The notes beneath the pieces were generated by a model. It searched no databases, was not told the DNA's origin, and saw nothing but the letters and a program-made list of their open reading frames with translations. A DNA stretch of 64,000 nt. Origin: Botryllus schlosseri (lineage: Eukaryota). The position numbers and the translations under genes were made by a program. Positions 20 to 28,900 of the stretch are shown here, in pieces (positions within the stretch are counted from its first letter, which is position 1; each line of letters opens with the position of its first letter). The stretch is taken from the NCBI GenBank assembly GCA_051294905.1, contig CM119379.1, forward strand, positions 17,360,001-17,424,000, in the 5' to 3' direction.

Positions 20-3000
20 CGAGATTCATTGACGGCGACAGCGGCTGCATCTCCAAATGAGACAGCTGAGATTCTGCGTCCTTGTGCAGGTCGGCCGACT
101 TTGCCGCGTTTTGCTTCGGAGCGTGCACCAAGAAGAAGGCTTCCACGGTGGGCTAGTCGTGAAAAAAAAAGTGGGTCGACACCGGTCTTATCAAAAAGAA
201 CAAGCTCGAGTCGATTACCTGCAACACCAGCACGGCGTGCGGATCGTTGCTGTCCTCCAGCTGCTTCAAACACTTTCCTAGATTGTCCCATAACTCCTCC
301 AGCTGCAGCTTTTCGCACAAGCTCCTCGGATCTGGAAAACGGACGGAAACTTGGGAAATAATCGTCGTGTGTCACATTCAAATTGGCGTGATTTGAAGAA
401 ATGACACGCATTGAATTCAATCGCTCGAGTCAATATAGACAGCGGTTCGGTGACCACGCAACACAAAATCTCACCTTCTTCCTCTACCAGCTCGTTCTTG
501 CCGTCACTTTCACTTTCAGTTGCGGTTGATCGTGAAGGCCGCGATGCCGGGTCCGCGTCATACCCACTTGACTCCAGGATGGTGGCAAGCGCGTTTTCCC
601 CAGCCTCGTGATCCTCGCGAGATATCCTCACAAACGGCAGTCCGGCGTTTCCTAAACATACCTTTCCATTAGCGTGAGAATTTCATTTTCCTTCAATTGA
701 TTCGTAAATTCGGAACAGATCAGCGGCCTACAGCTCGTTTGATCAGCTGTATGCGAAAACGTAGAGAATTGAAACATGAAGTTTAGAGTTAATTTGGAAA
801 TTCGGAACATAGTTTCTGCGTCGCGTCATAGAATCGAGATCCTGGTTTGCTATGAAGGTTCCGTACTGCAAAATGCCGCAAGTGTTGTGTCGAGCTGATG
901 GAAGTAACCTACAACTTTAAGCAGTTATATGCCGAAATTTTCAATTGATCTGGAAATTCGAAACGTATTTTTCAGCATCGTGACGTAATATCGAGTTCAC
1001 GGGTATAATTAGAACCACTCTTTGCATACGTCGAAATGCTGCAAGAGTCGTGCAAAACAGTTTAAAAGTAGCACACAAATTGTTCGACCAGTTACATGCG
1101 TAAGCTGAGAAGACAATCGAAACAATAAAGTATCTCATCGTGTTGCGGAAATTTCAAAAAACCACCTACAACGCATTATCAAAAAGGCAGCATCAAAATT
1201 CTTGTTACTGAAATTTCCAATATTCGCTTTACAGTAGCATACATTCGCCTCGATTACACATCAGGTTAATTTTGATTCATCAAGGTTACACAGTTCTGCA
1301 AAATCTATTTTGAAATTCCGATGGTCCCCACGCTAATCAAGGTTGCGAGCCACCGAGACAGAATCTCTCACCGAAAACGCGTGCGGGCCATCCGCGGCCC
1401 TGAACTCCCATCGATCTCCTCCCGCCTGTTGTGCGCTTGTCTTCCTTCTTGCTAGAGCGTAGCTGGATGATCACTTTCAAGATGCGGAGGAAAAACGCCT
1501 GCGACGACGACAAGAGATGTTTGTAATCGGCACGGACAGTCACGGCAGTCAGCGTTGCTACGCAAGCAGATGTAATAGTCATTCTGTAAATTTCTACCCG
1601 AATACAAGTTGAAACAGCGATTTTCGATATGTGTCAAAACTGCTTCATGCGGAAGTAGTACATGTAAGGTTCTGAGTAGTTTCAAAAAAAATATTTAGTG
1701 ACTAAACAAATAACGAAACCAAAAATAAGTACAATTTTCGTAAATAAAGCAGCGGTTGCTGTGACGGTTGCTATTCGACCGGGCTCTTACGGCTATTTGA
1801 CACACACGAGTGATGCACGAAAAAGTACTTTCATCTTTTCAAAATCCATCTGTAAAGAGTAGTTTTGCCAAAAAACCTGTTCCAGCAGAAGTGGTAGTAC
1901 TCCAAAAACGTTACTGCTCGAGTAATTAATACAAGTCAGCAAAACCGACGGAGTGCTTTGAGCAAGCGGAAGTGCTACCAAACGGGTTATCGACGACCTA
2001 TGCCGTTTCTTTGTTGTAGAGATGTTTTCGACGGGATTGTCAAAAATCACAGACGAATATCGGCTGTCAAACGATGCCGCAAAAAATTTTGTAATTCAAT
2101 CGCTCGCGTCGGAAAGCAGACCTGATTCGAAGTCTTGCTGGTGAGGTCCTGCATGACGGGCAGCTGGAGATCACGTCCGACCGATATCACTTTCTCCTTA
2201 CCGGAAGGCTGCGACACGGCGAGAGGATCCGTCCTAAACCGGAAACGCGTATTGAAGAGACAACGCTATGCTACGCGATTGCATGTGGGAAAGGTTGGAA
2301 TTGCCATCATTGCCTTCCACTGTCCAAAAATGCATGTTATGCGTGCGTGTGCGTGCCTTTTCGTGGGGGGTCGTAGTGTGAAGACTCGGGATGGGCACAA
2401 CAATTCGAGCACTCGAATCCGAGTCAAATAATAAGAGTCGGTTTTGCCTAGCGCTTCGCCAACTAGAGAACATACGCTTCACATCGAGGATAACGTTGCA
2501 ATGTCTGTCACAATAGAAGGAGTTGCCTTGTTCTGCACGAATTCTTGGCAACATCCATACCTAGAATTTCCAGCATTGTTAAATCTTAAAAGCCCCATTG
2601 ACTCGCAGGAGATTCATGATACTATTCGTACTCGGTTCAATGCTAACAAACAGCAATCATATAACGATCATACAACGACACCGAAACACGTATGATAGCC
2701 ATCAATCGGTAAATGATGGTCGACATTCTCACCTCTTGTTCGTTGCTGAAGAGCTGCTAGCCGAGATGCCAGACGTGCTGGTTTCAGGCCCAGGCGGAGA
2801 AGCCGCATCCAGCACCATGTCCTCGACGAGATGCTTCGACATTTGCTCCGACAATTCGACGACCTGCGCGCACAGCTTGTGGCCTATCTCTTGAGCGCCT
2901 GCGACAAACACGAAAATTGGAGCAAACTGTAGGACCTACGCATTTAGTGATGCCGCAGCCCTTTGTAGCAATGGTCCTGACCGCCAGCCCTTGCACCGAT

Positions 3001-6000
3001 GCAGGTCTGCTAAATATCTATATCAATTTCATCCCCAATTGCAAAATGTTAAGACTGTTTATATAGAGTGATTTTGAATTCTCTACTAGTCGCTGACCAT
3101 AGGCGCCGACTTTTATTTTTTTTACGAGGTGGCGAAGTCTTGTGACGTCATAATTGTTCCATATCGATGACGTCATTGTCGCACGCAAACGTAATTTACT
3201 ACATGCCGCTGGTGTACGTGCAGAGCTGAACCATTCGCGTGACGTCTAAATATCGGCCTTGCACTCATTAATATCAAACCATGCAGTCGAGTTATTAACT
3301 GGAATCTTAAAACGGTACGATCATTTGAAGTGTAACTGCGGCCAGCGCTACCAGTCCGTCCGACTGAATCTGCAGTCACATCAATGTTATTCACGCGCAA
3401 TGTCCAGTGTGACTAATGAAATACACTACGCACTGGCCTTGCAAGTAACACACAAAAACTCTCGAATACTTCGAGCAGACAATAATGATGATTACAAACG
3501 CGAAATCGCGCAGCCAATCAGTAATTGTCTCTTGCGGTTTCTTGCTTCGCGTAGACCAACTCGCATCGCGGCAATTGTTTGATGATTAAAACATTGGTGC
3601 ATTTCCCGATTTAAGTTCGCGAAGCGTTTCGGGAGTACATCGGTCAATTCGTAAATTCAATTTGCATGTCGACAGCCGCCAACGCATACTAATTGAATTA
3701 CGTGTTGACGGCCGCACAAATTTCGTTCTACGGCCGCGTGTTGGCCACTCTTGGGCTAGAATTAATTCCACTTCCGGACGCATGCCGCGATCTTACCAAT
3801 AGAAATCCACTGTCTATCTAATGCCTAATAGTTTAATATTTAGTAATGTTGTTCTCGATACGAGTACATCCAGCAATCAAGTTTATCGGAATGTAAAAGG
3901 TTCCCTGTTCAAACGAATCGAATAAAATCAGAATTTGTGCCACCCATAATCTTGTGCTGCATCACGATAATAATGAAAGGAACACTGAAAAATGACTTTT
4001 TCGGAGTACGAATGTATCAAACAGATAACAAGAAATATAGATGATGGTAAATGAGAAAGCATGTAATCTAATCAGTATCGCCACAATCGGTTTTGAGTGT
4101 GACACCGTATTGAGTAGTTTTCGTCACAACAATTGTTTTCTCATTATATCGGTGTTTAAGCTGTATTGCTGCATTTCCCGATTAATTTCACGGGCAAAGC
4201 CTTGTTAAAGAAACGAATCTGCGCAGAAATGAATTCCAATTTGCAGGCACACACCAACCCACCCTCCAATTTCGCGCTCCGATTACCGATCACGAAGCTA
4301 GCTAGCTCATGAATGGTTTTGTAAACGAATATGGGTGCACATAATTTAGATTTCAGAAAACCAGAACGCATATTTGGGCACCTGGTAGGCAGAGGAGATC
4401 TAGGATGGTGCTTCTCAGCACACGCTAGGCGCGTAGCCAGTCGAAAAATTAGGGGGATTTGTATTTTTTTCAAATTTACCAATATAGCATCAATTCCATT
4501 CGGGTCAAGTACATGTGTAAATGGCGATCATATAATCTCTTCGTATCGACGATTTTAGGCGTATGATAAGCTTGCCAAAGAGTCCGGGAGTGCTGTCAAT
4601 TAGCGAGTCAGTGATCTCTGGTGAACAATTAAATACGCGCGCGTATTACGCAGTGTCGGCTACAGTTTTCGCAAACTAAATGCCCGAACTTGATTGCACC
4701 GATTTCAAACCTTTGTCGTATTTCAGAACTTGAGACATGATACACATCTTATGGTCGTTACGTTCAAGTATTAGCGGGAATCAATTTCGCACGTTAAAGT
4801 CTGTTTGCAGCGATTTGATGTTATTCAGTTTCGCGATGTCGCTTTTTAATCAATATGACATAAAACAATCACTAATTAGCGTAAACTCGACCGTATTGTC
4901 TCAAAACCAGCGAGAGATAGGAACCAAAGCATGCTAGGCCCGAGACGCGATAGTTAGGCCATAGGCCAGCAATGATATCTGTCACTCCAAGCCTGTAGCA
5001 GATGCTGTTGTGTAGGCCAGCGATGATATCGTGTACACCAGGCCGAAGCCGCCAATGCCTATTCGATTGCACAGTTAAGCGATGATATAGTGTGTACTGG
5101 GCCTACTGCAGATGCGATTGTTGAAGCCTGCGTCACCAGGCTTCATCGAGATGCGATAAATCAGGCTGGTTAGGATTGGCACGCGCACGGGAATGAATGA
5201 CCTAATTTCGCGACCATCTCAGCGGGAGATCATCACAGATTCTTCTCGCTAATTCACAACACGTTTCTCGCAAATCCGCCGCGCGGAACACTGATTACAC
5301 AATTATTGAATTGCAACTGAATATTTGAGTTAGAATGATCATTTCAAAATGACGGGGTTTCGCGTTTCAAATAGGGAAGTTAGACTTCCGAAACCCCCGT
5401 CGCCACGACGTCTTTAACAAGGTCGCATCGATTCGCCTTATTACTGGTCACAAATCACTTGGGCGTTTGAGCATTTTGTACGGGGTGGCCGCCTATGTCG
5501 CTGACGATTATCTCTGTTTTGTCCTTATTTTGAGGGAGAAAAACTACACTGTCCTTATTATTTTCGTGTCAAGTGATGACCTCATACTAGGATGGCTATA
5601 ATCATGGCTGGTCGAGAGCGATGGCTTTTCCTATATTTTTCAGCATAAATTCGGCGGATGGGCAATAGAGAATAAAGGGCTCGTAAATTACATTCCCGCC
5701 TACCTTGCAGCAGCAGCCTGACGATAATCGGCCGCAAGTTGACCTGGGTCTTGGAAAGGTGGAAGAGTAGCGTGGTGGCGTGCTCGAGTCCATCCTCGGA
5801 GCAGGCGTGGCTGGTGAGGATCTGCACGGCGAGTTCCAGCTCGCGTTCCAGCGGTACGCTGGCTTTGTTTTTTTTCAAGAAATACGACGCAAAAGATATC
5901 GAGCCCTGGCTTCGCGTCGAACCTGAAACGCAAAGACAGGATAAGTTGTCGTCGGTAGCCAAAATTTCAAAAGGTAAGTCCTAAATTTGTGCCAGTACGC

Positions 6001-7949
6001 AGAGTATCTGAAGATTTGACAGAACATTGAAACCCCAAAAATGCCTCCAAATCTCTAACTCCCGATCTAGGATATTTTATATACGCCAGAAGCTGTCAAA
6101 GCAGTCAGCGTTGCTATTCAAATACAAGTAGCCATGTAAATCTCTACCATGTACGGTCTAAGTAGAAGTACCATTTAATAGCACCATACACATGCCCATT
6201 CCAAGACACCTAAAACTACTTCAAGATTAAGTAAAAAACTATTGAACTGCTCAAGTAACTAGTTTAGACAACGTAGTTCTGGTTGAGGGGGCCCGCACAC
6301 TTTTAAAAGTTAATCGGAGGTGCTACTTTGAAACAGCAAGGCTTATCTTTGAGACTAACGCAAAAAGACGACACTACAAACAATTTCGCCCAGTTTTCAC
6401 GACCACTGCACTCGTGGTATAAGTGAAACAAACTCATGCTGAAACTACTTTCTGCTTTACAAAATCCATATTGCAGTAAATAAAGTATTTTATCAATGAC
6501 TACCCCTGGTATTCACATATTGACAATGGCGATGGCAAGAAACTCAAAAACGAAATTTGTAAAATCGTGATGCTCGATCTTCGAGACAAATATGGGCTTC
6601 AGCCCGTCAATATAACTATCGGCCACTACAATATAACGATCGAAAACACTCTAATGCGAGGCACATCAAGTGTGGACTCGTCCTGTAGTCTCACCGATAA
6701 GAGCGCAATTCTCTAATCAGTGTTCGTCAAATCATATGCGACAACTACGCCCGTCATTCGAGGTGTAAGTTCCAAAAGTCCGCACTCACCTGTGGTGGCT
6801 GTCTTGGTATCCATCACAGCCTGGCCGACAGTGCTGGTGTTGCTTGTACTGGCACGCGCGCCCATGGTAGCGGTTTGCTCCTTTTCGTTCGGCGTGGAAG
6901 CCGAATCACTTCTCAACGAAAGGGGTTGATTAGTGCATATAAGGTTACGAGTCCGCAAGTTGAAAAAAATTCAGTCTCAATAACGATGATAGGATATAAC
7001 CGCTGAAAATCAATGCTAACGCTGATAATTTCTAGTTTGGCGTTTCCAGACAGTATCACATTTGGCTACCTCCGTCTTTTACACCACTTTCGACATTGTA
7101 GTTTTGTCACTAAATCAACATCGTAAATCCATATCCGTGGAAGTGGCATCAGCTATATGTCAATTGGGCAGACTTCCTCAACTTGGTTCAGTTTAGTGGA
7201 GGCGAGTTGACTTAATTTTTCTCTGCGCCTCAACAAATACAATAACATAACACTACTGTAAAAACTTCGTTTCAACAAATATTTCCAGCAACTTTTGAGT
7301 CCGTAAATACAAATTGCATCTTAAAGTACATTGAACGCTCTCTTATTTCAAATTTGATGCTGGTGACGTCATATTTTGTGATACGATTGTTGATACAGAA
7401 TGTTGTTTCAAATTCTCTACCAGTTGCTGACAATTACCCCCGACGAGTGTCAGCAGAAAATATTTGGGCTCATTTCAGTATGAATATATTATGCAATTGT
7501 ATACTGAAGTTCTGTAACTCCAGGAAGCTCTTCAAATTGCATTCTTTATTCCTTAGATTCGATATATCAAACATGTTTCATAAACAATTTGTTTTACTTT
7601 TATTGCAATATGTCCAATTAACGCAACCCAAAACATTTTCTCAGAGAGGACAATAAGAAAATTTAGGGAACCCCTGGTCCAAACGTAAGAAGAAAATATA
7701 CGTACTCCTTTTTATCGCTGTCGTCTTTCTGGCTGTCGGAATTTTTCGTGTCCGGGTTCGTTTCGCCCACAGATTTCGCGGGCGACGGCAGATGCACCGA
7801 GATCTGGGCCAGCAGACGCAACAAGCGATCGGTCAGTGGCTGGCTTCTCTTGATGACCGGATGGGTGAGCATCCTCATGAGCTCGCCCATGCACGTCAGC
7901 TCGATGTCGCGGCTCGCCAGTTCTTGAACCCTCTTCTCGTCAGCCGCGT
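20..7949 (-). CDS. HUWE1: HUWE1 C-terminal ARM and pre-HECT exons, including the activation segment and PIP box
   Basis: [69 protein letters not shown]|[48 protein letters not shown]|[11 protein letters not shown]. Confidence 0.94.
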
Positions 7950-10900
7950 CTTAAGGCAAAATTCGATACCACAAATTGTGAATTAGATAATTCTAATACA
8001 ATCGTCCATTTCAAGGTGCACGGAACAGGGCAGAAAAATATGCATCGATTTCACGATCCTACTATTAACAAGCAATTTCGCCTATTCATTACGGTTGTGA
8101 ATAGCGCTGGGCAAAATGAGATCACAATCAAGATAAATTGCAATATTTTAGACTATACCACTTTGTGTCAATGCTGCAGGTTGATCATGACTTCACAGAA
8201 ATTACGTTTCCACCCGATTGCATGCATAGCTTTGCGTTGCATGTTTCGTACGCTGTGATACGACCTATCGTGGTTTAAAGGCTTCCTCGGCGGGCGAGAA
8301 TAGCAAAGAAACTACAATTATCGTACAATTAATACACTCGATTCAGATTACAGTGATCAGCATTCATCCTTTAGCAGACCACGGTATTTCTAGAGAAGAG
8401 AACCTTTTATCCCATATACTTGATGTAGTTCGTCACACGACGTGAAATACTCAAAATCACTCACTCTTTTTCGGGAGCTCAGACGAGAAGGACAGCGAGT
8501 CCAATCGCAGCAGAATATCCCAAAAATCGGTCTCGACCCTTCTCTCCGCCCCGGCGTCTCTCACCGGTCCCAGCCGCTGTCCCACAAAGTGCTGCGGAAA
8601 AAACTTGGCCAGCATATGCAGAGTGTCCACCACGTGCCTGCACACGACGGGCGACGCCTGCGGATGAACGTAGACCCGGCAGTCCGCGCCACGTTTCTTT
8701 TTTGCGCCGCCCCGGCCGGGCGCCGCGACCCGGAATATCCCGGTCCTCGAGCCCAACGCCGCGTCCAATTTAATCGAAAGCCAAGACAGATTCCTGGACT
8801 CTGACAAGGCCGTCACCGGCTGCGTCTTCACTATTGCGCCAGGCTTCTGCTTGACCAGCGGGGTGGTCCGGTAGTCCATAGCGTCGTCCACGGCATTGTC
8901 GTTGTCGCGAGTCTCACGCGAGTGCTGCAGTATCGCCACCAAAGTCCCGACAAGCCAATGCCTGGTCGGGACATGAAAGCATATATTACGCAACACCCTA
9001 TGCAGCCTGGACAGGTTTAATTTCGGCTCGCCCACAAAAAGCAACAGCAGCAGACACGCTAACGAGTCGTGACTCAACAGCTGTCGGACCTGGACTTTGA
9101 CAGGCTGTGCACCGTGTTGCTTAGCCCTGGCCTCGCGTAAGTCACCCCACACCGTCCCGGTGGGCAACCGAAATCCGGACGACATGTTCAGCCTGTTCAA
9201 CTGGTGGCGTCCAGCCAGTAACCTCTCTTGCATGTACCTGCCCTGGCGACGTCTCAGTGTCTCACGGTGTTCCTGGGCCTCCGCGGCCAGGTCGGCTGGC
9301 AGGACCGCTATCAGCGAGTCGTCCATCTCGGCCAGCACAGACTGTCTGAGTGTGCTGGGTAGGGTTTGGATGAAAAGGGTGGGGTCCACGGGCTCGGCGG
9401 CCGAAGTGGTCTCTTGCTGCGCTCGGGCCTACGAAGAAAAGTGTCGTCATTGGTCTTGTTCATTGTTGTTGATAACGGTGTTTTAGAAATAGAATACTTG
9501 GCGACTCGAAATTTGACTAAAAAATTAGTCTCCGAGTCACGAGTCAAATCGAATGGTTAGGGCAGTACAAACTTGACCCACTAATTCTTGGTGACTAATT
9601 AAATTACTTGGAGCAAAATGGCGGTAATCTAACTATAATCTAATTTGTGAAATGTTTCTATGCTGTATGTTTAGTTCTAATCTAATTACTGGAATTCTTG
9701 TAAACGCTACATGGGAACTGTTAATTGCGAAACGAGCCAGCCGAGCTTCCTGTACATAGATTTTCTACTCTCACGAGACTGAGCTATGATAGGATATGGA
9801 CTGAAATTTATTCACTGTCCAAATTTTCAGGAATTCAGTAATTTTATTTCTGCTCCACTTTAGAAAAAACTATGCGCAGCTACAATTCTAATTCTACTCT
9901 AATGTAGGAAAAAAAACGGTAGCTACGGTTCTAATTGTAATCAATTTTGAAAAGCTAAAAAATTTTCTACTCGAGCAGTGGCAAAAGCCAAGTCAAGTCG
10001 TTCGGAACACGCGACTCGAGGCAAGACATCCGCTCACCCGTTCAGCGCGCTCCTGCGCCAAAACCTCCTGCTGTATCGAGGGAGGCAACGCCGCCAAAAA
10101 CTCGGGGCTGACACCGCTCGCCTGACTGTCGGAATTGCCGGTCCTGCGCGCACCTTGCCGGCTGAGTTGCTCCCTGAAATAGTAGGGCAAAATGCAGATA
10201 CACGACGCGGTCCCCGACAGCAAGTGCCTCAACGCCGGGCGTCCCACGCACCCAGATGTGGACAGTAGCGAAGTGGCCTACTTCTGCTTTATCTGAGTAT
10301 GTACTCTCCGTGCACTCGAGTGGGTTTTGCCAACTCGCACTATTGACTCACTGGTTATGTTTTTCACGCTAGTTCCACTTCTGCATAACAGGTTATTAGG
10401 CAAAATCACTATTACACTTTGGGCTTCGCAAAGTAAAAATAGTTTTAAGATATGCCCTCGGCGCTTTTACGAGTGAAATTGCCTGACAACTATGATGCGG
10501 TGTGTGAATATATTTTCGAAAATCACACCTATTTGTAAAGTCATTGATCATATTCGTTCACCGACTACATCTACTTTTCAAACATAGCTACTTGAGTACT
10601 TTTCGTACATTCATTTCCTGCTTGTACTCCATGTCTCAGTTTTACTTCTACTTGAGTAGCAACGCTGACTGCTTCGAACGATCCCGCACGTACCTGATCA
10701 CTTCCTGCCTGATGTCGTCTGGCAAAGCGGCCAAAAAAGACGGGTCCACCCCCTCGAACTCGTTCACGGGTTCGACCGTCGCGTCCGACTGCGTCTGGCT
10801 CGCGGGTTCTGTCGAGAAAGTAGATTCGCACGTCTAGTGACGTCCACAGACTAGTTTAACTACAACTCATTCAACGCCTGCACGACGTGAAAGCTAAGAA

Positions 10901-13900
10901 GACTTTTCAAACAAAATTTGACGTTGCAACAGAATCTAGCAAACAGCGAATTCACATTTCTTTTGAAAAGAAACTCAACAATCTAAATTTGGATTAAGAG
11001 GGCTTAGCCTTACAGAAAGGACACAGATTTCTCTAAAAATTAAACTTTGAAATCTTGTATACTCCTGACAAAATGAAATTATGGGTTGGTTCCAATCTTT
11101 GAAACTGTACCGTTCCGCAACTCGAAAAGGCCGAGAACCACTGCTTTATTTACAAGATTTGTTCTCAATTTGTAAGACAATGTCTATTCAAATTACACTG
11201 TCCTTTTTTTCGACTCAATCGGCCATGACAGAAGGCTGGACTGAAGTGTTGACATTTTTTTGTCACCGGTTAGGTCTTCAACCGGTCCAGGGTCGGCCAA
11301 CCTTTTTGGCAAAAGGGCCACATGCGGGTTTTCGAACCATTGCGCGGGCCACGTGAGTATTGATGACCTTTTTAGTCGCCGAGACTTCTACAAACGAGAC
11401 AACAAACTCTAACCTGCGACAGGGTCCACCGACGAGCCCTCTGCGCCTTGCCCTGGCTGCGGCACTCCTTCACTCGGCGCAGCACCAGGCGTTTCTTGAC
11501 TTTGTGCCGCCGGCGGGCCACTTTGCTCCGGGGCAGCTCCGGCCACGTCACCGACCTCGTCCTGTTGCATCTGCACGTCGGAGCCGGCTTCTTCGTCATC
11601 GTGATTGGAAGATAGAGACACGGATTGTAAAGAAGAACTGGCCTGTTGCAAAGCGTCTATGGCGTCTGCGTCGGCAAAAAACGACTCGATTGCTTCGAAA
11701 TTGGTGGCTGTAACGGAATATTTGCGAGACATTCATCTAATGACCTAAAAGGCCGTGGTATGTCGATATATTCTTTCGGAACATTAGTTATAATTCTCTG
11801 TACAGTGTACATGGGACTGAGCCAAAATCGAGTACCAGGATGTTTCCGAGTCGGGTATCAAGCTTTCAGTCACGTTTCGGGTGGGACAAATCACGCCAAT
11901 TTGGGGGGTGTTTGCCATAAACATGACATAATGTATTATAAAAGTCAGGCTTGTACAAACTATCAATCTACTTATATATTAGCAAACTAACGACCAGTTT
12001 TTCGAGTAATTCTAGTTCTAGTTAGGGATATTTAAAAGTGAGCAGATCTAGTTGCGCATTGAAAATATTAGTTTTAGAATAATTTGAAATCGTGATATCG
12101 ATGCCCTGTTGTTCGTTCCGGTTTATTAGCAATTTTTATCACTTCAATAGACCACAAATATTGCGATACAATGACAAGATAGGAAGGTGTCGAAACGACT
12201 TGGAGTAGTCTTTGGAATCGGACATCTTGCAGTCATCCCTACTAACAGTGACGCAGCCGGACGGCGAGTTTCGGGGTTTAAAGCGCCTCACATTCAAAAT
12301 CCCGTCTCTCTGAACTGCCCGTTCTATCTCCAATATTTCTTAGCTCATTTGCAGTTCAGAAACTCGTATTACCCTTTGCTAGTTGGTGCTTTTGTTAGTT
12401 GCGGATTTCTAAAGGCAGTTAGTTCTTGTTGTAGCTGTGCATTTTCAAAATCCATTAGTTTGTACAAATCTGGTGACAGAACGTCGCTGGTTCAGAAAGA
12501 TATGTCGTTGTTATGAACATACATTCTGAGCCATTTGACGCACGTTTTGGATGATGTGGTATGAAGGAATTATCGGCTGAGAAATTGAGTACTCCATAAA
12601 ATCGACTCAAGCCAGTAGACTCAAACATTGAAATGGCTACTCGACTCGGATTCTGGTACTCGAATCAGTGAACCCAGCACCCAGGCCTATCTGAACAGAT
12701 TGTGTCTCTTAAAGGCACCAAATCAATTCCAATCAACGGCCGAGCGCAAATAGACGACGCTTGAAAGAAGGAGTGAATCATACAGTTATCTCCCGTTGAT
12801 AAATAGCATCACGCAACTGCATATTCCACTACCTCAGTTCAAGACGTGCTGAGACTCTTTGAAAAACGCTGAAGAGACGGTGACGATTTCAGACCGGATG
12901 TGTAAGCTAGTAGGACTACCAGTTATCTCCTTGGCTCAATATTACAACTGATATAACCTACTACCTCAGCACATCGCGGCCCATTCGTATAGCCCTAGCT
13001 TCCGATTAACTGTAATATTGGCAAAGTACGGTCAAGAGTTCTACATTTATTTCATATATAAGAAATCGTTACTCGTTTATTAGTAGTTTGAGATTACTTT
13101 TCGTTTGAATATCACTAACATTGTCTGTCTGCGCCATCGACTATTTGGACATATATCAAACGCGAAAAATGTACGAGGGAAAAATTCAAACCCTACTTTG
13201 GACCAAGCACGGTCAGACGACAGCGCTGGAAGTTGGGAGGAGGTCAGTGGTTACGCAGTATCTCCCGTGTCGCTAATCTCAACCACTACATAACCTACTA
13301 CCTCAACCTAACAAGCCAGCAACCCAGACCAATTTCCTATACGCTTGTTATAAAGCGGCGGTGTAACGGAATTTTTTCAATAGCACAGCAGCATCTTAAA
13401 ACTGTGAAAATTCATGGACATAAGAGCAGACACGACAATATGGATGGCTGCCCACAAAACATACAAAACGATCCAGATTGAATGTCAATTATCGGAAATG
13501 AACATAAAGCGTTCCCGACATGTGAATTGGCTCCATATAGGAACAAGATGAAGTTAGCAGACCGCTCTGGAGAGATCGCAGGTTAGGCAGCTATCACCTT
13601 TGCTTCGTGATATATCAGTCGAGCGTCAACTGCATAACCAACTACCTCATTCAGAGCCGGCCCAGTACCGGATCCGGACTACAAGTCGCGAACAGACCGA
13701 GAAAACTTGCTAGACACATACCAGGTCTGTTGGCCGGAGACTCGGGCCGCGTCGCGATCGGTGTGTTGGTCGGCGTCGACACCTCTGCAGGTCCGGCGTC
13801 GGCGTTAGCCTGCGCACAAAAGCCAGATGGGGATCGGTCGGAGAGATTTGAAATTTGAGTGAAAATGGGGCAAAAGCATCAGATCTTCCGAGACCAATAT

Positions 13901-16900
13901 CAAAAGTATTTCTATTTTCTGAAGTAGGTTTCGCCTACACGCAGCACTCAGTCAAGAGGTTATGTCTTTAAAATATATCCACTTCTACTTGAACGGTTAT
14001 TTAAACGAAACTACTCGCTTTCACAATTTGAACATTACATCTCGTACTTTGTAAAGTATCCCTCCTCCGATTAAGTGACCCAGCGACCAAAACTACTTTT
14101 CAAATTACTTACTCATACTTTCATTTTTTTACTTCCACTCAAAGTAGATTTTACAGTCTTCCCATTTCCAACATAGCTACCTTCTATTAACCCTTTACCC
14201 CTTGACCAAACCAACTTTGATCAGCTACTTCCCAGCGGACTTTACACGCCTTTTATTGCTTACTTACACTCAAAATTGTTTCAACATGTCGTAGAAATCT
14301 ACGGTTTCACTTCCGTTTTAGTAGAAAAGCCGGCTGCTCTCTTACCGCCGATTCACTGGCACCGCCCTCGCCCGGCGCACGTCCTTCTTCCGGTTTATCC
14401 GTCTGCTGAGCTTTGCTTTCCGCCGCCTTGCTCGCCTCCTCCCTCTCCTTTCTCTCTTTCTCGACCGCTCTTTTCGCTCTCCTCTCCTTGATGTCCGCGT
14501 TTCTGCGCGACTCCCACGCCTGAAGTACTTCGTTACGCAGACCTGCAGGTCGAGATGGACACGATCAGGGTCGGGATCGTCGCAGAAAAAAGGTCACACC
14601 TATCGCGTTCGAAAAGTTGCGAGCACATTATCAAAGGCAATGAAATGAGTGCACGGAACGCAAGGCGCATTTAGCCGATGGTCCAGTCGGATTATTGAAA
14701 TTTACAATGTGAATGATATATTCGCGTACTCGGGTGAAGAGATTTTTCGGTGCACCAGTCAGACAATCAAAATTCACTGTCGGAAGAAAAAAAATATTTG
14801 CAGACACAGGTGTTGACAGAATCTTGTAAGCGATTGAAAGATGTGGATTCGGTCTGGATTCTAAATCGAATTGTTTTCATTTCTGAGAACACCCAAGTAA
14901 GTTTTGCACTACTCTTAACAGTTTTTGAGGAAAAACCATTTACATTTTTGAATTTGAATTGTGAAACCATCAACGGCTAAAATTATGTGTCCCTCGACCA
15001 AATCTACTTTATGAAACGACTGACTGGAGTACTTCTCATACCTTTCCTTTTCTGCTTTACCACCAAGGCAGTTTGAAATGTCTTGGACATTCCTACTTCT
15101 AGTTGTCAATGAGCAGAAATTCATGGAGTTATTCTACTCACACATCAGTAGCAACATTAACTATTTTGACAGCCTCTGTCAGCAACACGCAGCAGAGAAA
15201 TGCTGCGCTACGAGGGTGGAGATTCTAAAGACAATGAAAAGCATTGAAACACACTCACCGAGCAAACAATACTGGACACTGTCAGGTTCCAGCACCTCGC
15301 AAGTCTGCGTCCACCTGGACAACGCAGTGGGTAAGACACTAAGCGGCCCTCCAGAGGGCCGGCTGCCGCTCATGTGATCCCGGGGGTGATCCTAAACAGA
15401 AGTGTAGCGTGTCAAATAAAACTGGTGGAAGCCTAAATTAATGAGGTAAACGCGATCGACATGCCTGCAGAGAAGAGCCGGGCGCATCTCGGTTGTATGG
15501 ATAGAAACGAATGTTGTTTGAGTTTACCATCAGCTGGGCGTGGCCCCCGCCACTACCTTCGTTGTAAGCTGAGTCGTTCAAGTGTATCACGCTACCAGTA
15601 GCGCCAGGACCTAGTAATCTGAAACCGGGATCAATTAGACCATGACGCTTGTGCAAATTTACATTTCGGATTACACTTGAAGCGAATTTTGCAGAATTTT
15701 CAAAAAAATAAAATTCGATATTCCGCTGAATGCGGCATTGGGCGCAGATCAGAAAGTTAACTTATCATAAAGAATGTTAATTGTGGCAACCTGCTGGATT
15801 AAAGTTTCACAAGACAACTCGGGATGATTCTCACGCGAAATCTTATCCATCTTTAAGCGCCACGATTAACATTTTTAATCATACGATGAGCAGCCTCCCG
15901 GATAAGCTGACTTTACGATCTACGCCCACAGCATATTATCAAGCGAAACATGTATTATTGCATTCATAGATTCGAAAATGAATGTTTCACCGAAAGAGCG
16001 CGACTGTTATGTATGGCACATGGAGTATTTGGCATGCTGAATTCAGCACTTGGTATGTATGTAATAATGTATTTAGATTAAGAGCTAGGGTTGTGGGTTA
16101 GGTTATTGTCAGGGTAGGTTTGGATTAGGATTTGGGGCCACCAACTACAGAATTCACGAACAGCTTCTTGGAGGTACAGAACTTCAATATACAATTGAAT
16201 AGCATATTCATATTGAAATGAACGAGAATATTTTCGGCTGACAGGGGTAATCGTCAGCAACACATGCAGAGAATTCAAAATAACACCGTATATCAACAAT
16301 CGTATCACAAAATATGACGTCACCAGCATGAAATGCCGAAGTGCTAAATTAACTGGCAACAGTCTGACGCAGTGTTTTCTAAAAAATTTTACGCATCGCA
16401 CCCCTGGCTAATAATCCAGGTAAAAAACGCCCCCTACCCTTAAACATCAACAAAAAGTTGTTTTGTTTATAACGCATTCAAACATCGTTAGTGCTTATGA
16501 TGGGTATTTTAGGTTAATATAATTTAACACTATCAACGAATATAATCATAATCATTCCCTTTGAATGCATTCGTACATTGCGGTACATGAAGCTCTTATA
16601 AATTAAACATTCTCGTTGGACAGGCATTTATAAATCTGTGTTCTAAAACACTATCTAATAATTCCGTTCGTTATGATCGATTGATTAGAAAACTCATGTT
16701 GCATGACAATGAGAACATCCATAGAAAGCGTTGGTGACGATTTCAAATTGAATGGCACAGCACACAGCGTGACCATATCTTCATAAATCTCTTCCCAGTG
16801 CATGAGTATAGATATGAATTAACGTATTTTCAGCACAGATTTCCATAGTGCACAATGCCCGATTTTACTCTCAGCGCCCGCCAATCGCACAGTTTGTAGT

Positions 16901-19900
16901 TAGCGCACACTTTGGGAACCACTGGTCTAACGGCACGTGCTTACCTTCTGAGAATGTGGGGCGCTTCCTCCGAGTTGCTCGTGAATTCAATCTGCACTGT
17001 CTGCCCACTACCGTTGGCGGTAACTGTATAGGAGGCGGTAGGTCTTGACTCGACGGTTCCGGTGCTGCGAGCGCCGGTCGACAGCGAAGTCCGAGACGGC
17101 CTGGTCAGCATCGGGTGCACGGTCGGAATGTGCCAAGATTGAGACGCGGCTGAAACATAAGACAGGTGTTCAGACAGCCCAGGTGAACATGGGCAAATCG
17201 TAAAACGCAATACCCGTAGTCCCGCTCGAGTGATCGTCACCCATTGGTACAGGCATGGTGAACAGCTGGGATGTCCGTGGGTTTACGGGTTGCGGAAGAC
17301 GTCCTAGAAATCCGTCTGTAAACGAGACGACAGTAATTGAAAGTGCTGTCGAGCGGCACAATACATTTAGAGACGTCATAATCAACAAATACCACTTCTT
17401 TGCGAATTTGATTGGGAACCCGATGCACTTCGATTCTGATTTAGGGATAAAATACTCTCAGGGATCGTGTACACAAGTTGGGACTCCACGACATCACGAT
17501 TCTACAAACCTAGAATTGTCACCGGCTTTTCTGAATCCCAATCCAGAGATTAATTGTAATTTCTAGAATTCTTGACGCGAATCGATGCTGCTAATTACTG
17601 AGAATTGATGGTGCACGGCGGTCCGCGATCTCCCAATACCGAGTGTATTCATTCGTACACGAAATGGAGTGACCGATATCTCCTGACACATTTTAATACG
17701 ATATGTGGGCATCGTGGTGAACACACGACTTCGGCGAGAGATTGCAGACTCGTCAATTGACGGCACAAGGCTGGTATTATGACATGCCAATGACATTAAA
17801 TCTTTGTTTCTTAACGAGTTCTTATCCTAACGGACGTAAGTGTGGCTTATTCAGGTTTATATACATCATGCTGTGCGTAAGCTTGTGAGCGCGAGGAAGC
17901 TTTTCAGATACTTGTATAGGCGGCATTTACACGTGCACAAAACCGTAATAAAAGTGATGCTACGTTGGTAAACTTGGGAAAGTTTAAACATTCTTTTATT
18001 GGCTAGGTACGTGGCTGCACCTGACGCTTTGAAAGCAACTTTACAATATCACCCGATTGTCTGAAACACTCCACGCCATGGAGTCAAAATCCCAGGAAAT
18101 ACCAAAAATTACTATTTTGACTTCGTTCCCGGCCGAATTTTCCAAAAATTCCGCCTTAAAAAGTGATTCAGTCTCACCGCTCAAGACATCCTCCAATTGG
18201 AAGATCTGTTCGTTGGCCTCGTTTAGAAGGTCATAGACAAACGTCTCGTAGTTAAGATGGTTGGGATTTCCACCGTCGTCGTCGTCGTCATCTTCATCAT
18301 CATCATCATCAATATCGTCCATTTCGGATCCTTCATCCTCAAGATCCTGACCAATACAGTTTTCATTACCGAGAACAGAGCCACTCCAACGTTTTTCAGT
18401 TCGCGACCCACTTTCCGTACAAGCTTTATTGTACGACCCACAATGAGATATGACAAAATGAATGAAAGAAAAGAAACGATAAAACACCTGTGGAAAGATC
18501 AGATTGGCTTGGGATCTTCTTCAAATGATAGCTAACCAAGAACAGTGAATGCGTGCATTGGAAGCAATTCGCAATATACAATGCAATTTACTACACCAAA
18601 GTTTAGCTTGCATATTAGCTATTCACTTCTAGGCTTGATTGCCGTGATTCTTCTTCTCAGAAAATATCGGGAAATACAGAATATTGAGGTTCAGCATTCC
18701 AAAATCCTTTTGATATGAGCCTATAAAACTGCAACCACTATCAATTACACGACCTCGTATTCCTGTTCCACCAGAGCTAGTTTCGCGACACACTGGTTGG
18801 GAAGCACCGGTCTAAGACATGTGTTATCGAAAGGAATATTCTACCTGATCGTCGTTATTGATTTCTTCAGTGGGATCGTCGCTGGCGCTAGATTCCTGGT
18901 CATCGTCGTCCTGGTCATCCTCCATGACCACCTCCACCTCGTCCTGGTCCGTACTCTGACTCATCATCAGGTCTCGCGGAAAATCTTGTCCGGCCGAATC
19001 TATGGAAGTGACATTTGCGTTTCAGTTTTCCAGTACCGAAATGTTGGCTAGCAAACGCCATCGCATGCTGGGAACTCCGTAGTAGGGTTGTTCAAAGATA
19101 ATATTTTTTGCAAATTTTATGGCCAGCTGATAGAACTGTTAAGATTGGCTAAGAAAACGATTCACTTCACGCGATTTCACGCAGCTTTCTCCTTCATCTG
19201 GATGTGGTCAATACAATCATACCGAGAACTGTTAGAAATTCTGGGACTGATTTAAATTCGCCCGTTGCTCAAGCTGTCCGCCATGTTTTCGAGAAAAAGG
19301 GCCTACGATTAAGACTATAATCTTTCAGTCGCATGGACCAACATCTATTTGGATTTGACCTTCCGGACTGAATTAGGATACCACAAAGATTTGGACATGG
19401 CATTTCCAAAAACTGGGAATTCGGATTACATTATTCACATACACTGACACAAACAAAGAACGCATGCAACCCTGCTCCGGTATCAACAACGCGTCACCGT
19501 TATCAGGACAACAAAACTGCCGACTCGTGAATTCATTAGTTTCACATGCAGTAATGGAACATTTCAGAGCAACTGAACATTGTTTATGACCGGTTTACAT
19601 TTTGTTCTCATGCAACAATAGGGAAAGAGCATGCTTGCGACTGGAATGATATAAATTGCTCGCGACCCAACCCAGATTCAGGCGATAGCTGCTATTCTTC
19701 GAGTATACACCCTCAAAGAATCATAAGCCTGATTCAATTTTACTGCAACGTGAATCCCAAGCAACACAACCGAGTTATATCCCAGCCACAAAACAATAAC
19801 TCAAAAATTAGCCCCACACGATCACCGCTAACAAGAATAAACACAGATAGCTTCCACAACCCTAACATGCGTCATCAACGGCCGCGTGCCAAAATAATAA

Positions 19901-25900: not shown

Positions 25901-28900
25901 TACAAAGGCACGAGAAATCAAAGTGCAAAAAGAGAGCGAAACGAAATAGGGGTCCGTTCTTACGGAAGGATAGAATACGTCCGTGGCGTCTTGTGAGCCA
26001 TGCGACGGTCCTTCTTCCGTGACGGGAGCCACGCTGCCCTGGCGAAGCACCGCTGCGCGTTCCTCTTCGCGGACTGCGGCTGCTTCGCTCTCGCTGTACC
26101 GGCGGTTCATGTCGTCTGCGGCCTGGGGGCAGGAAAAACCGGGTGTTGATTCACGCGTAGTCCGTGTGAATCTAGGGTCGGCGCCCGGCATGCAACACCG
26201 CGCAAGACAACGGAACGGACAAACGTGCGGCTCAAATTCAAGAGTTCGATTCTGATGGCAGGCGCGGATGCGCACAATGAATGTACGAGTGTAAAATTGC
26301 CAGGACACCGTCGTGAAGATAATACAAAAATAAATTGCCTACAGCAGAGTGTGAACTCTTAGACACATCTCAAGCAATCGCTAAAATAATTGGTTGACTT
26401 TTTACTGTCATATTTGATTGTTTTTTAGAGGTGGTCACTTTTTCAAAGTATTCACATAGGACATGTTGACTTGCCAATCTACTTATGATAACAACACTTA
26501 CAATTTGGTAGTAGTTTCGCGGTACAACGTTAAGTACGAAATTGTCATAACAATTGCGCGATGTGTCCACTGTATTATAGTAACCAAATTTATTTCAAAA
26601 AATTCGCACCTCCTTGTACTGTTTTGAATCTTTTTGCGTTAGTCGCGAAGACGCACTTTGAAACTTTTGAAATTGAAACTATCTGTTACCTGCCAAAATC
26701 ATGCGACGCCCACCGACCAAATCTACTCGAAATACCATTTATACCTTCATTTTCAACTTCCGCTTGAAATAGCATTCACACATCTTGAAAAGCTCTTGAC
26801 CGGTGGGAGCACTTCTGAATTTTTCATTGCATTGCATTCCGATACATTAGTTTTGTAAGTAGCAACGACTGTTTTGGTACGCTATCTTTAAATCGATTTT
26901 ATCCACGCTGGAATAATAGTGGAAAGGGTTGACACCAAACCGATCGCAGACACCGTAACGTCGCATGCAAGTTTGGTGGTGATTCACGGCCACGCAGAAC
27001 ATAAGTAGCCCAACCACGTAACAAAGAGCAAATCATTGCATGCTATAAAATATGGAAATATTGCAGCCGGTGAACAAATGCACATAATCCGATCGCAAGG
27101 CATATCAAACGCATGCGGTCAAAAACCGAAATAAACCAAAATCTCACCGACGACTCGTCCTGATTCTGCGATAAATTCAACAAAAATTTGCAATACTCTC
27201 CCGGCGTGTCGTACGGAAAGACAAAACCCTTACCTTTCTCAAATGAAGCGCCATAGATGTGACAGATGATGCTGATTTCGAGTGCGCTTTTCCGGGTGGT
27301 TCTAAAATCACGAACACAGTTCAGAACACCGTCGCTGTGCCCACGTACATGATATATACCGGTATCCAGGTGCGGCCTATCGTTCCTGACTAAAGCGTTC
27401 AATAGTAGCTGTAAGATATGCCTCGTCATGTGGTTCAGAGCGGCTTTCGGCTTCGAATGGGCGCCGGGGTCTTTGACCAGCTCGAGAATCTGCACAGCTT
27501 CGTTGTTCATCATACGAGTTTCTTCTTCTTCAATGCCTGTCGACGGTGAAAATTGTACGTGCCGCAAAAACTTTGCGTGATGCTAGACGCCGTGTATTTG
27601 GTTCTTAAATTCCAGTGGCAAAGTAACGCAAAGACGCGTCTTGGGACACATTTAACGGACTTCCCACACTTCAATGTGTAACTTTAAAGGTAATGGTGTG
27701 CTAAGACTGCGTTCCAGAATACCGCTATGCAGCAGTAACAATTTAATATTTACTAAAGAGATTTTAATTTCACTTTCAAGTATGCAATACGGATACATGA
27801 TTCGCGATAACCTTCAGACATCATCATGGCCGAACAACATATTAGAACAATTATGTGGCTGCCGTCAAATGGGAAATGCCCTCGATATTGAGGATTTCAT
27901 TGCATCAAAAAGATTCACGCCCTAGACTTATACAGATTTATAGATTAGATAGATTAAAAGCGAAAGGGATGTCAGCCTCCATGCTGTACATTATCCTGTT
28001 CAAAAAAATTTCCTTTTCCAATTCTTGCTTGCTAGGTGATTAAATCGTCAGGTTGCCAAAATAAAAAAGATTTTTGGTCATGTCGGAGTGACGAAATTTG
28101 CCACCGTAAATACTATTATTTCAGAAATAAACAAAATTTCACTTTGGCAGTTATCGGCATATACTGGTTGGAATCGAGTCAAATTTGGTGTGCATCGTTT
28201 TCTATGCAACCTGACGATTTAATCACCTAGCAAGCAAGTTTTAGGATTTGAACAGCCCTACTGTACATCGATTGATGGACTTTGTATATACCGGCTAACA
28301 AATCGATAGTAACCAAGCGATCTCAACAACAGTTGGCAAAGACGGAAATGAAATTACATCACAGCAGAAAATCCATACCAAACTCCCGGATTGCAACACC
28401 AAAATTCGGCTGACGACCAAGTCAACAAACAACGCCGTTGCAAAATTCCATTTTTGCAAAAATTCCGAATAGCGCCCAATCGATTCCGGACAGGTTCAGA
28501 CCTCGAAGCCGAGAATTGGCCCACACAGCAAGCATGTTCAAGAGAACCACTTGTCTATCAAACTCTTTCCGAATGACACACAGTCACACAGAGCACAGAC
28601 CGACAGGATGCTCGTCAGCGCTTTTGATTTCGGGGAATCGTCTTTCCAACGCCGCGAGCGCAAATTCAAAACGGAAACGTGACGCTGGTGACAAACATGC
28701 CCAAACTACGTCGCTAGCGGCGCCCGATAACCAACCACAAAAACCAACGCCCTGAGCAGACTTGCACAAACTAATGGATTTTCAAAATACACAAGAACTA
28801 GACAGAGCTCAAATTAACAATCTTTAGAAATCCACATCCAACTACCTAAAACACAACTCACGTACATGCAATACCAAGTAACTCATTAATTTTTGTTTTA

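What the first reader, a model, noticed from the sequence alone, without database searches (positions are those of the whole stretch)
12760..13657. Four tandem let-7 hairpins inside a HUWE1 intron of an apparent invertebrate chordate
Seen: four sense-strand hairpins within about 900 bp of intron 11708-13721. Each has the let-7 seed, a well-paired 3p arm and a basal stem, and three have the GGAGAU loop end. Established: human let-7f-2 and miR-98 are intronic in HUWE1; in vertebrates HUWE1 ubiquitinates MYC/N-MYC, while let-7 represses MYC-family and LIN28 mRNAs. Inference: the host intron lies between the tower exons and UBM1, which may be the orthologous intron. If so, the HUWE1/let-7 unit predates the vertebrate genome duplications and expanded independently to four copies here. 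One transcript would then supply both a degradation arm and a translational-repression arm against overlapping growth regulators. Tunicate let-7 clusters are already catalogued, so the new part may be the host-gene synteny rather than the miRNAs.
Basis: partly seen in the sequence, partly recalled or inferred. Interest (0 to 1): 0.92.

Follow-up and report, generated by a model that had tools for sequence, protein, structure and literature searches.

The report
Sea-squirt let-7 cluster inside HUWE1
Four real let-7 microRNA genes sit in one intron of a sea squirt's HUWE1 gene, in what looks like the same intron as in a bird and a shark, but this arrangement was published for other sea squirts in 2012, so it is an ordinary orthologue.

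Summary
Four let-7 precursor hairpins lie on the minus strand at 12761-13655. They are sense to a HUWE1 gene that fills the window, and they sit inside intron 11708-13721, whose splice joint is confirmed by RNA contigs. They are the only Rfam matches at E 0.05 or better in the 64 kb.

The host intron lies between the Tower exons and UBM1. It matches the let-7 host intron of a crane in exon count after the Tower exon and in intron phases (1-0-1). A shark also has let-7 between the Tower exon and UBM1.

Two claims fail:
- **"Expanded independently here" is wrong.** The four mature sequences and their order match the four-let-7 cluster published for Halocynthia roretzi. An unidentified tunicate in JGI metagenome contigs has the same cluster, plus one extra copy, in the same intron.
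- **The synteny is not new.** Hertel et al. 2012 (PMC3384580) reported four let-7 copies in an intron of the Ciona HUWE1 homologue. [quoted passage not shown]

No small-RNA run was listed, so processing is inferred. The MYC "two-arm" idea is untested.

Verdict: real, well conserved, already known. The intron-level match is a small addition.

The parts
13566..13655 (-). let-7 hairpin 1 (type a, first in the transcript). Predicted 5p is UGAGGUAGUUGGUUAUGCAGUU at 13628-13649. Loop ends GGUGAU.
   Evidence: RF00027 37.1 bits. Fold -41.5 kcal/mol, z = -3.1. Own model R1 68.1 bits, but this hairpin is in R1's training set. One mismatch to the first Halocynthia S93 let-7.
13233..13311 (-). let-7 hairpin 2 (type b). 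Predicted 5p is UGAGGUAGUAGGUUAUGUAGUG at 13284-13305. Loop ends GGGAGAU.
   Evidence: RF00027 32.4 bits. z = -3.9. The mature sequence is identical to the second Halocynthia S93 let-7. Best precursor match is metagenome hairpin b, 0.72 identity.
12898..12974 (-). let-7 hairpin 3 (type c). Predicted 5p is UGAGGUAGUAGGUUAUAUCAGU at 12947-12968. Loop ends GGAGAU.
   Evidence: RF00027 42.6 bits. z = -6.9. The mature sequence is identical to the third Halocynthia S93 let-7 and to metagenome hairpin c.
12761..12842 (-). let-7 hairpin 4 (type d, last). Predicted 5p is UGAGGUAGUGGAAUAUGCAGUU at 12815-12836. Loop ends GGGAGAU.
   Evidence: RF00027 43.1 bits. z = -4.0. One mismatch to the last Halocynthia S93 let-7. 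The last metagenome hairpin is of the same GUGG...AUGCAGUU type.
11708..13721 (-). Host intron of HUWE1: 2014 nt, GT..AG, phase 1.
   Evidence: Spliced joint 11707/13722 in RNA contigs of runs X12 and X20. Splice dinucleotides. Phase taken from the continuous reading frame.
13722..13809 (-). Exon just upstream of the let-7 intron. It encodes disordered linker and is the second exon after the first Tower exon.
   Evidence: Joints. Open frame. A homologous exon lies just upstream of the let-7 cluster in the metagenome tunicate, L005:5217-5267.
11414..11707 (-). Exon just downstream of the let-7 intron. It encodes disordered linker before UBM1.
   Evidence: Joints. Open frame. A homologous stretch lies after the cluster in L005:7402-7449, 81% identity over 16 residues at E 0.07, so this is weak on its own.
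15259..15391 (-). First Tower exon, used as the conserved anchor. It aligns to human HUWE1 residues 2636-2672.
   Evidence: PDB sequence search E 4e-4. Tower is residues 2641-2696 in PMC8476073. The intron after it is in the same aligned column and the same phase 1 as in the crane.
14346..14542 (-). Exon after the anchor: the rest of the Tower and a charged helix. It is followed by a phase-0 intron.
   Evidence: Joints. Frame. Aligned to the crane exon covering residues 2693-2742.
10694..10808 (-). UBM1 exon.
   Evidence: Joints. The translation contains [18 protein letters not shown]. tblastn with bird HUWE1.

Best explanation
This is the orthologue, in another sea squirt (ascidian tunicate), of the known HUWE1-intronic let-7 cluster. 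That cluster is the homogeneous second let-7 locus, the counterpart of vertebrate cluster F (let-7f-2 and miR-98).

Shown here:
- Four let-7 hairpins lie in the sense orientation inside one spliced, phase-1 intron of HUWE1, between the Tower and UBM1 coding exons.
- The stems are kept by compensatory changes.
- The paralogue order a-b-c-d is shared with other ascidians.

Inferred mechanism: the hairpins are transcribed as part of the HUWE1 pre-mRNA and cropped by Drosha/DGCR8. Each has a basal stem of about 11 bp, and three have CNNC motifs about 16-20 nt downstream. The products are then exported and diced, yielding four 22-nt 5p isoforms. All share the seed GAGGUAG and differ at positions 10-22. 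The GGAG at the loop end of three hairpins fits LIN28 control, as in vertebrates.
For: - Rfam let-7 hits and seed statistics.
- Stable hairpins.
- The host is HUWE1 on the same strand.
- The intron is confirmed by RNA joints.
- Intron sequence that includes the hairpins is present in RNA-labelled runs (X8 contigs 11730-13364, X12 contig 13581-13751).
- The four mature sequences match the Halocynthia S93 cluster in order, with 0-1 mismatch each.
- A second tunicate has the cluster between homologous exons.
- 11 of 22 stem pairs show compensatory changes across 10 hairpins.
- Model R1 finds exactly four copies in the window and scores the shark hairpin, which was not in its training set, at 61.5 bits.
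- The crane host intron matches in exon count and phases.
- Hertel 2012 describes the same arrangement in Ciona.
Against: - No small-RNA run was listed, so mature 22-mers, 5' homogeneity and 2-nt overhangs are unverified in this species.
- All four hairpins score below Rfam's gathering threshold.
- The strand of the intronic RNA coverage is unknown, and DNA carry-over in those runs cannot be excluded.
- Run X8 covers the intron but not the flanking exons, which could point to a separate transcript.
- Intron orthology with vertebrates rests on exon count and phase in a disordered linker that cannot be aligned.
Confidence: 0.9

Rival explanations
1. The cluster is an independent transcription unit with its own promoter inside the intron. 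Let-7 output would then be uncoupled from HUWE1 expression. This is a rival for the mechanism, not for the identity.
For: In run X8 (labelled RNA?), contigs cover 11730-13364 of the intron almost without a break at depth 5-10, while the flanking exons have depth 0.
Against: - Logan contigs are filtered, and by the tool's own caveat a hole proves nothing.
- Strand and library type of X8 are unknown.
- The X12 contig 13581-13751 runs from hairpin 1 across the exon-intron boundary, as unspliced pre-mRNA would.
- Sense orientation in the same intron has been kept across tunicates, a bird and a shark, which fits host co-transcription.
Confidence: 0.2
2. Convergence: let-7 copies entered HUWE1 separately in tunicates and in vertebrates, so the shared host is a coincidence.
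For: The residues flanking the intron do not align between the window and the crane; the MAFFT alignment puts the two let-7 introns about 55 columns apart in a low-complexity linker. Copy numbers also differ: 4-5 in tunicates against 1 detected in the crane and 1 in the shark.
Against: - Same gene, same strand, same interval between the Tower and UBM1.
- Same number of exons after the conserved phase-1 Tower intron, and the same phase series 1-0-1.
- Hertel 2012 assigns Ciona copies to the vertebrate let-7-1 and let-7-2 subfamilies with covariance models.
Confidence: 0.07
3. The hairpins are decaying relics that are no longer processed.
For: They score below the Rfam gathering threshold. Hairpin 1 has U at position 10 of its 5p and lacks GGAG. 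Hairpin 4 has a diverged central region.
Against: The seeds are intact. Two mature sequences are identical to, and two are one mismatch from, those of a different ascidian. Compensatory stem changes are present. All four fold well.
Confidence: 0.03

Closest known systems
Ciona intestinalis and C. savignyi homogeneous let-7 cluster in an intron of the HUWE1 homologue (Hertel et al. 2012, RNA Biol 9:231, PMC3384580)
   Same: Four closely spaced let-7 copies in a HUWE1 intron of an ascidian. The first and last copies are of similar type in C. intestinalis, as they are here (both end in AUGCAGUU).
   Different: A different species: the window is about 43% GC with long introns, which from my own knowledge of Ciona's lower GC content makes it unlikely to be Ciona. 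The paper does not say which intron. I could not fetch a Ciona locus to compare directly.
Halocynthia roretzi scaffold S93 let-7 cluster (Wang et al. 2017, BMC Genomics 18:314, PMC5399378, Table 1)
   Same: Four let-7 within about 970 nt on one strand. The order is the same, and the mature sequences are identical (b, c) or differ by one base (a, d).
   Different: That paper does not name the host gene. Here the host gene and the intron are defined by splice joints.
Vertebrate cluster F (let-7f-2 and miR-98 in a HUWE1 intron)
   Same: Sense-intronic in HUWE1 between the Tower and UBM1. In the crane the intron is third after the first Tower exon and is phase 1, as here. The shark has the same interval.
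   Different: Only one hairpin was detected in the crane and one in the shark, and two are annotated in human, against four here. The central mature sequence is GUUGUAUAGUU or GAUUGUAUAGUU rather than the tunicate GUUAU type. Three exons separate the intron from UBM1 in the crane, one here.
[quoted passage not shown]
   Same: Holds a let-7 family member processed from a polycistronic transcript.
   Different: The window has no mir-100 or mir-125. This locus is homogeneous and lies inside a protein-coding gene.

Membership tests
let-7 microRNA family (Rfam RF00027) | 5p arm begins with U and carries the seed GAGGUAG at positions 2-8 | tested here: met
   Exact TGAGGTAG at 12836, 12968, 13305 and 13649 on the minus strand. 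Each lies at the 5' side of its hairpin stem.
let-7 microRNA family (Rfam RF00027) | Precursor folds as a hairpin of about 80 nt, with the mature sequence in the stem, a paired 3p arm and a basal stem | tested here: met
   Minimum free energy -34.9 to -45.7 kcal/mol, z = -3.1 to -6.9. Basal stems extend beyond the 5p start.
let-7 microRNA family (Rfam RF00027) | Score at or above Rfam's curated gathering threshold (53.5 bits) | tested here: not met
   Scores are 32.4-43.1 bits. This is an annotation cut-off, not a biological criterion. E-values are 2e-5 to 0.013 for the whole window, and no other family matches. The tunicate hairpins in L005 also score 33-53.3 bits.
let-7 microRNA family (Rfam RF00027) | Stem kept by compensatory substitutions among homologues | tested here: met
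   11 of 22 consensus pairs have changes on both sides that keep pairing, including all four basal pairs.
let-7 microRNA family (Rfam RF00027) | Expressed 22-nt mature RNA with a uniform 5' end and a 2-nt 3' overhang duplex | not testable with these tools
   No miRNA library could be listed for this organism. Logan contigs cannot hold 22-nt reads.
HUWE1-intronic homogeneous let-7 cluster (Hertel 2012: Ciona cluster and vertebrate cluster F) | Located in an intron of the HUWE1 orthologue, on the sense strand | tested here: met
   HUWE1 domains and a match to human HUWE1 on the minus strand. Spliced joint 11707/13722.
HUWE1-intronic homogeneous let-7 cluster (Hertel 2012: Ciona cluster and vertebrate cluster F) | Same intron as in vertebrates | tested here: inconclusive
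   The crane and the window agree in having two exons between the first Tower exon and the let-7 intron, and in the phases 1-0-1. The shark interval agrees. The flanking residues are disordered and cannot be aligned. Human was not examined.
HUWE1-intronic homogeneous let-7 cluster (Hertel 2012: Ciona cluster and vertebrate cluster F) | Only let-7 paralogues, closely spaced, with no mir-100 or mir-125 | tested here: met
   Four copies in 895 nt and nothing else in 64 kb.

The most novel reading that the evidence does not exclude
The very same phase-1 intron of HUWE1, two exons after the first Tower exon, has carried let-7 since the common ancestor of tunicates and vertebrates. In ascidians the paralogue order a-b-c-d has stayed fixed. 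This would imply selection for more than 500 million years to keep this let-7 locus under HUWE1 transcription, that is, a functional host-miRNA unit acting on shared growth regulators such as MYC and LIN28. Intron-level orthology is likely; the functional coupling is unshown.
Probability: 0.3. Interest if true: 0.45.

Novelty: already known. Interest (0 to 1): 0.2.

Why it matters
It confirms, in one more ascidian, a textbook-level point of microRNA evolution: the second, homogeneous let-7 locus was founded inside HUWE1 before the vertebrate genome duplications.

- The host intron matches a bird's in exon count and phase.
- The four paralogues keep one order in at least three ascidians.
- One unidentified tunicate has gained a fifth copy.

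None of this changes current understanding. Whether the host-miRNA link is functional remains an open and testable question.

Tried and rejected
- **Other seed matches.** Those at 36377(+), 45423(-) and 45940(-) have no let-7 body, no hairpin and no Rfam hit, so they are chance.
- **Antisense hits.** The plus-strand mir-3596 hits are mirror images of the let-7 hairpins, in the same Rfam clan and with lower scores.
- **Small-RNA libraries.** None was listed.
- **Raw RNA-seq.** X24 and X21 gave no reads on the exons or hairpins; only a repeat core was covered.
- **Direct PDB match of exon 11414-11707.** None, because the exon is disordered.
- **Fetching HUWE1 loci.** The kakapo, spider and manakin proteins are not on record. 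The contig of the closest exon-level relative, P0001, has no DNA.
- **Finding a Ciona or other named tunicate HUWE1 protein.** Twenty cluster representatives were looked up and none is a tunicate. Direct comparison with Ciona was therefore not possible and rests on Hertel 2012.
- **A fifth copy in the window.** The Rfam E-value scan of all 64 kb and the custom model both found exactly four.
- **tRNA origin of the repeat core in the intron.** No tRNA was found.

Full report
**What is in the sequence.** The window carries most of a HUWE1 gene on the minus strand. tblastn with a bird HUWE1 (P0003, kakapo) gives 34 ordered segments, from residue 58 near position 63446 to residue 3713 near position 30. 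Pfam finds DUF913, WWE and UBM in minus-strand reading frames. Exon 8457-9389 aligns to human HUWE1 residues 3056-3401 at E 2e-58. The finding's hairpins are on this same minus strand, so "sense-strand" is correct.

**The hairpins.** Rfam's let-7 model matches four places on the minus strand:

| Hairpin | Coordinates | Bits |
|---|---|---|
| 4 | 12761-12842 | 43.1 |
| 3 | 12898-12974 | 42.6 |
| 2 | 13233-13311 | 32.4 |
| 1 | 13566-13655 | 37.1 |

- All four are below the 53.5-bit gathering score, which is why the gathering run was empty.
- In an E-value scan of all 64 kb on both strands, they are the only matches at E 0.05 or better, apart from one antisense mirror hit to mir-3596.
- The 8-mer TGAGGTAG occurs 7 times against 0.9 expected, four of them here. 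The other three have no let-7 body or hairpin.
- Each hairpin folds with z = -3.1 to -6.9 against shuffles, with the 5p in the stem, a paired 3p arm and a basal stem. Three have CNNC motifs 16-20 nt downstream of the predicted 3p end, though such motifs are common by chance.
- Three loops end in GGAGAU; hairpin 1 has GGUGAU.
- A model built from ten hairpins finds exactly four copies in the window.

**The intron.** Contigs of two RNA-labelled runs of the same organism carry the joint 11707/13722, with GT..AG ends on the minus strand. The same runs give the neighbouring joints. The introns are 10174-10693, 10809-11413, 11708-13721, 13810-14345, 14543-15258 and a 73-nt GC-AG intron at 15392-15464. 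Joining the exons gives one open frame from the Tower region through UBM1 and UBM2.

- Exon 15259-15391 aligns to human residues 2636-2672.
- Hunkeler et al. 2021 (PMC8476073) place the Tower at 2641-2696 and the UBM domain at 2951-3100, within a largely disordered stretch, 2259-3179.

**Is it the vertebrate intron?**

- I fetched the 37-kb HUWE1 locus of the red-crowned crane (L001). It holds one let-7 at 26597-26678, sense, at 75.2 bits. Its mature sequence equals what I recall of let-7f.
- Exact exon mapping puts this hairpin in the intron at 26462-27095.
- Counted from the conserved Tower exon, the crane has a phase-1 intron, an exon, a phase-0 intron, a short exon, and then the phase-1 let-7 intron. 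The window has the same count and the same phases, 1-0-1.
- The first of these introns falls in the same aligned column in both species. The later two lie in low-complexity sequence, where the alignment is arbitrary.
- Downstream, the crane has three exons before UBM1 and the window has one.
- In a bamboo shark locus (L006), a let-7 at 18406-18486 lies between the Tower exon (14563-14670) and the UBM1 exon (26919-27161). That locus contains assembly gaps, which I left as they are.
- I rate intron orthology as likely but not proven. Human sequence was not examined.

**Is the four-copy state special to this genome? No.**

Table 1 of Wang et al. 2017 (PMC5399378) lists four let-7 on one strand of Halocynthia roretzi scaffold S93 within about 970 nt. 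Compared in transcript order:

| Position | Halocynthia S93 | Window | Difference |
|---|---|---|---|
| 1 | (C)UGAGGUAGUAGGUUAUGCAGUU | UGAGGUAGUUGGUUAUGCAGUU | one base |
| 2 | UGAGGUAGUAGGUUAUGUAGUG | identical | none |
| 3 | UGAGGUAGUAGGUUAUAUCAGU | identical | none |
| 4 | UGAGGUAGUGGAUUAUGCAGUU | UGAGGUAGUGGAAUAUGCAGUU | one base |

- An exact-match scan of JGI metagenome contigs with the third mature sequence returned four contigs of one unidentified tunicate.
- In L005, five let-7 hairpins lie at 5439-7017. They sit between an exon homologous to window exon 13722-13809 and a stretch homologous to window exon 11414-11707. The UBM1, UBM2 and UBM3 exons follow.
- Their order is a, X, b, c, d. 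That is the same order as here, with one extra copy after the first.
- That upstream exon is 91 nt against 88 nt here by my reading of the sequence, so the intron phase is preserved.
- Across the ten hairpins, 11 of 22 stem pairs show compensatory changes, including all four basal pairs. This points to selection on the precursor and not only on the mature RNA.
- One-to-one orthology is clear for b and c (precursor identity 0.72 and 0.74). For a and d it rests mostly on the mature sequence and the order.

**What was already published.**

- Hertel et al. [quoted passage not shown]
- They state that vertebrate cluster F is expressed from a HUWE1 intron throughout.
- They also report that both amphioxus let-7 copies lie in the canonical mixed cluster.
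- A full-text search for let-7, tunicate and HUWE1 returned only that paper.

**How it most likely works.**

- *Shown:* sense orientation in a spliced intron; precursor-like folds; conservation and covariation. Intron sequence that includes hairpins 2-4 is present in run X8, and a contig in X12 spans hairpin 1 and the exon boundary.
- *Inferred:* co-transcription with HUWE1; Microprocessor cropping from the intron; Dicer processing to four 5p isoforms that share a seed and differ at positions 10-22; and LIN28 control through the loop GGAG.
- *Not testable here:* mature reads, because no miRNA library was listed.
- *Caveat:* X8 covers the intron but not the flanking exons. This leaves room for an intronic promoter, though contig holes are not evidence.

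**Organism.** It is coded in the run tables. The match of the mature sequences to Halocynthia fits an ascidian. The window's 43% GC and a HUWE1 gene longer than 64 kb argue against Ciona, on my own recollection of Ciona's lower GC content.

**Verdict.** This is a real and well-conserved let-7 cluster of a known kind, and the arrangement is already known. The intron-level match to a bird and the shared a-b-c-d order are minor additions. The proposed two-arm control of MYC-family targets remains speculation.

Noticed in passing
window 12162-12224: A core of about 55-60 nt inside the let-7 intron has very high depth in RNA runs of this organism (up to about 38,000 in X12), while its flanks are at background. 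Reads continue into varied sequence on both sides. It looks like a fragment of an abundant, expressed repeat family. It occurs once in the window and is not a tRNA.
   Followed up: partly
window 15392-15464: A 73-nt intron just upstream of the first Tower exon is spliced in two RNA runs, but it has GC..AG ends rather than GT..AG.
   Followed up: partly
window 11730-13364: Run X8 (labelled RNA?) has nearly continuous contigs over the 3' two-thirds of the let-7 intron but none on the flanking HUWE1 exons. This could be a stable intron or pri-miRNA fragment, an intronic transcript, or a filtering artefact.
   Followed up: no
L005 5439-7017 (also L002, L003, L004): An unidentified tunicate in four JGI metagenome contigs has five let-7 hairpins in the same HUWE1 intron. 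The extra copy (5714-5804, 5p UGAGGUAGUGGAUUCUGUAGUU) sits after the first hairpin. The last hairpin (6931-7017) starts with C instead of U (CGAGGUAGUGGGUUAUGCAGUU).
   Followed up: partly
L001 26462-27095 and L006 14671-26918: Only one let-7 hairpin was detected in the HUWE1 host intron of the crane and one in the corresponding interval of the bamboo shark, by Rfam and by the custom model. There is no second copy like miR-98. The shark interval contains assembly gaps, so a second copy there cannot be excluded.
   Followed up: partly
L006 1-10001: The shark annotation splits HUWE1 into two gene models, one of 2488 aa ending at 5215 and one of 1601 aa starting at 10001. The Tower exons and the let-7 hairpin fall inside the span of the second model.
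   Followed up: no
window 18041-18967: Two minus-strand reading frames upstream of the Tower exons (18041-18487 and 18824-18967) encode long acidic D/E runs. From memory, this resembles the acidic stretch of vertebrate HUWE1; I did not test the correspondence.
   Followed up: no
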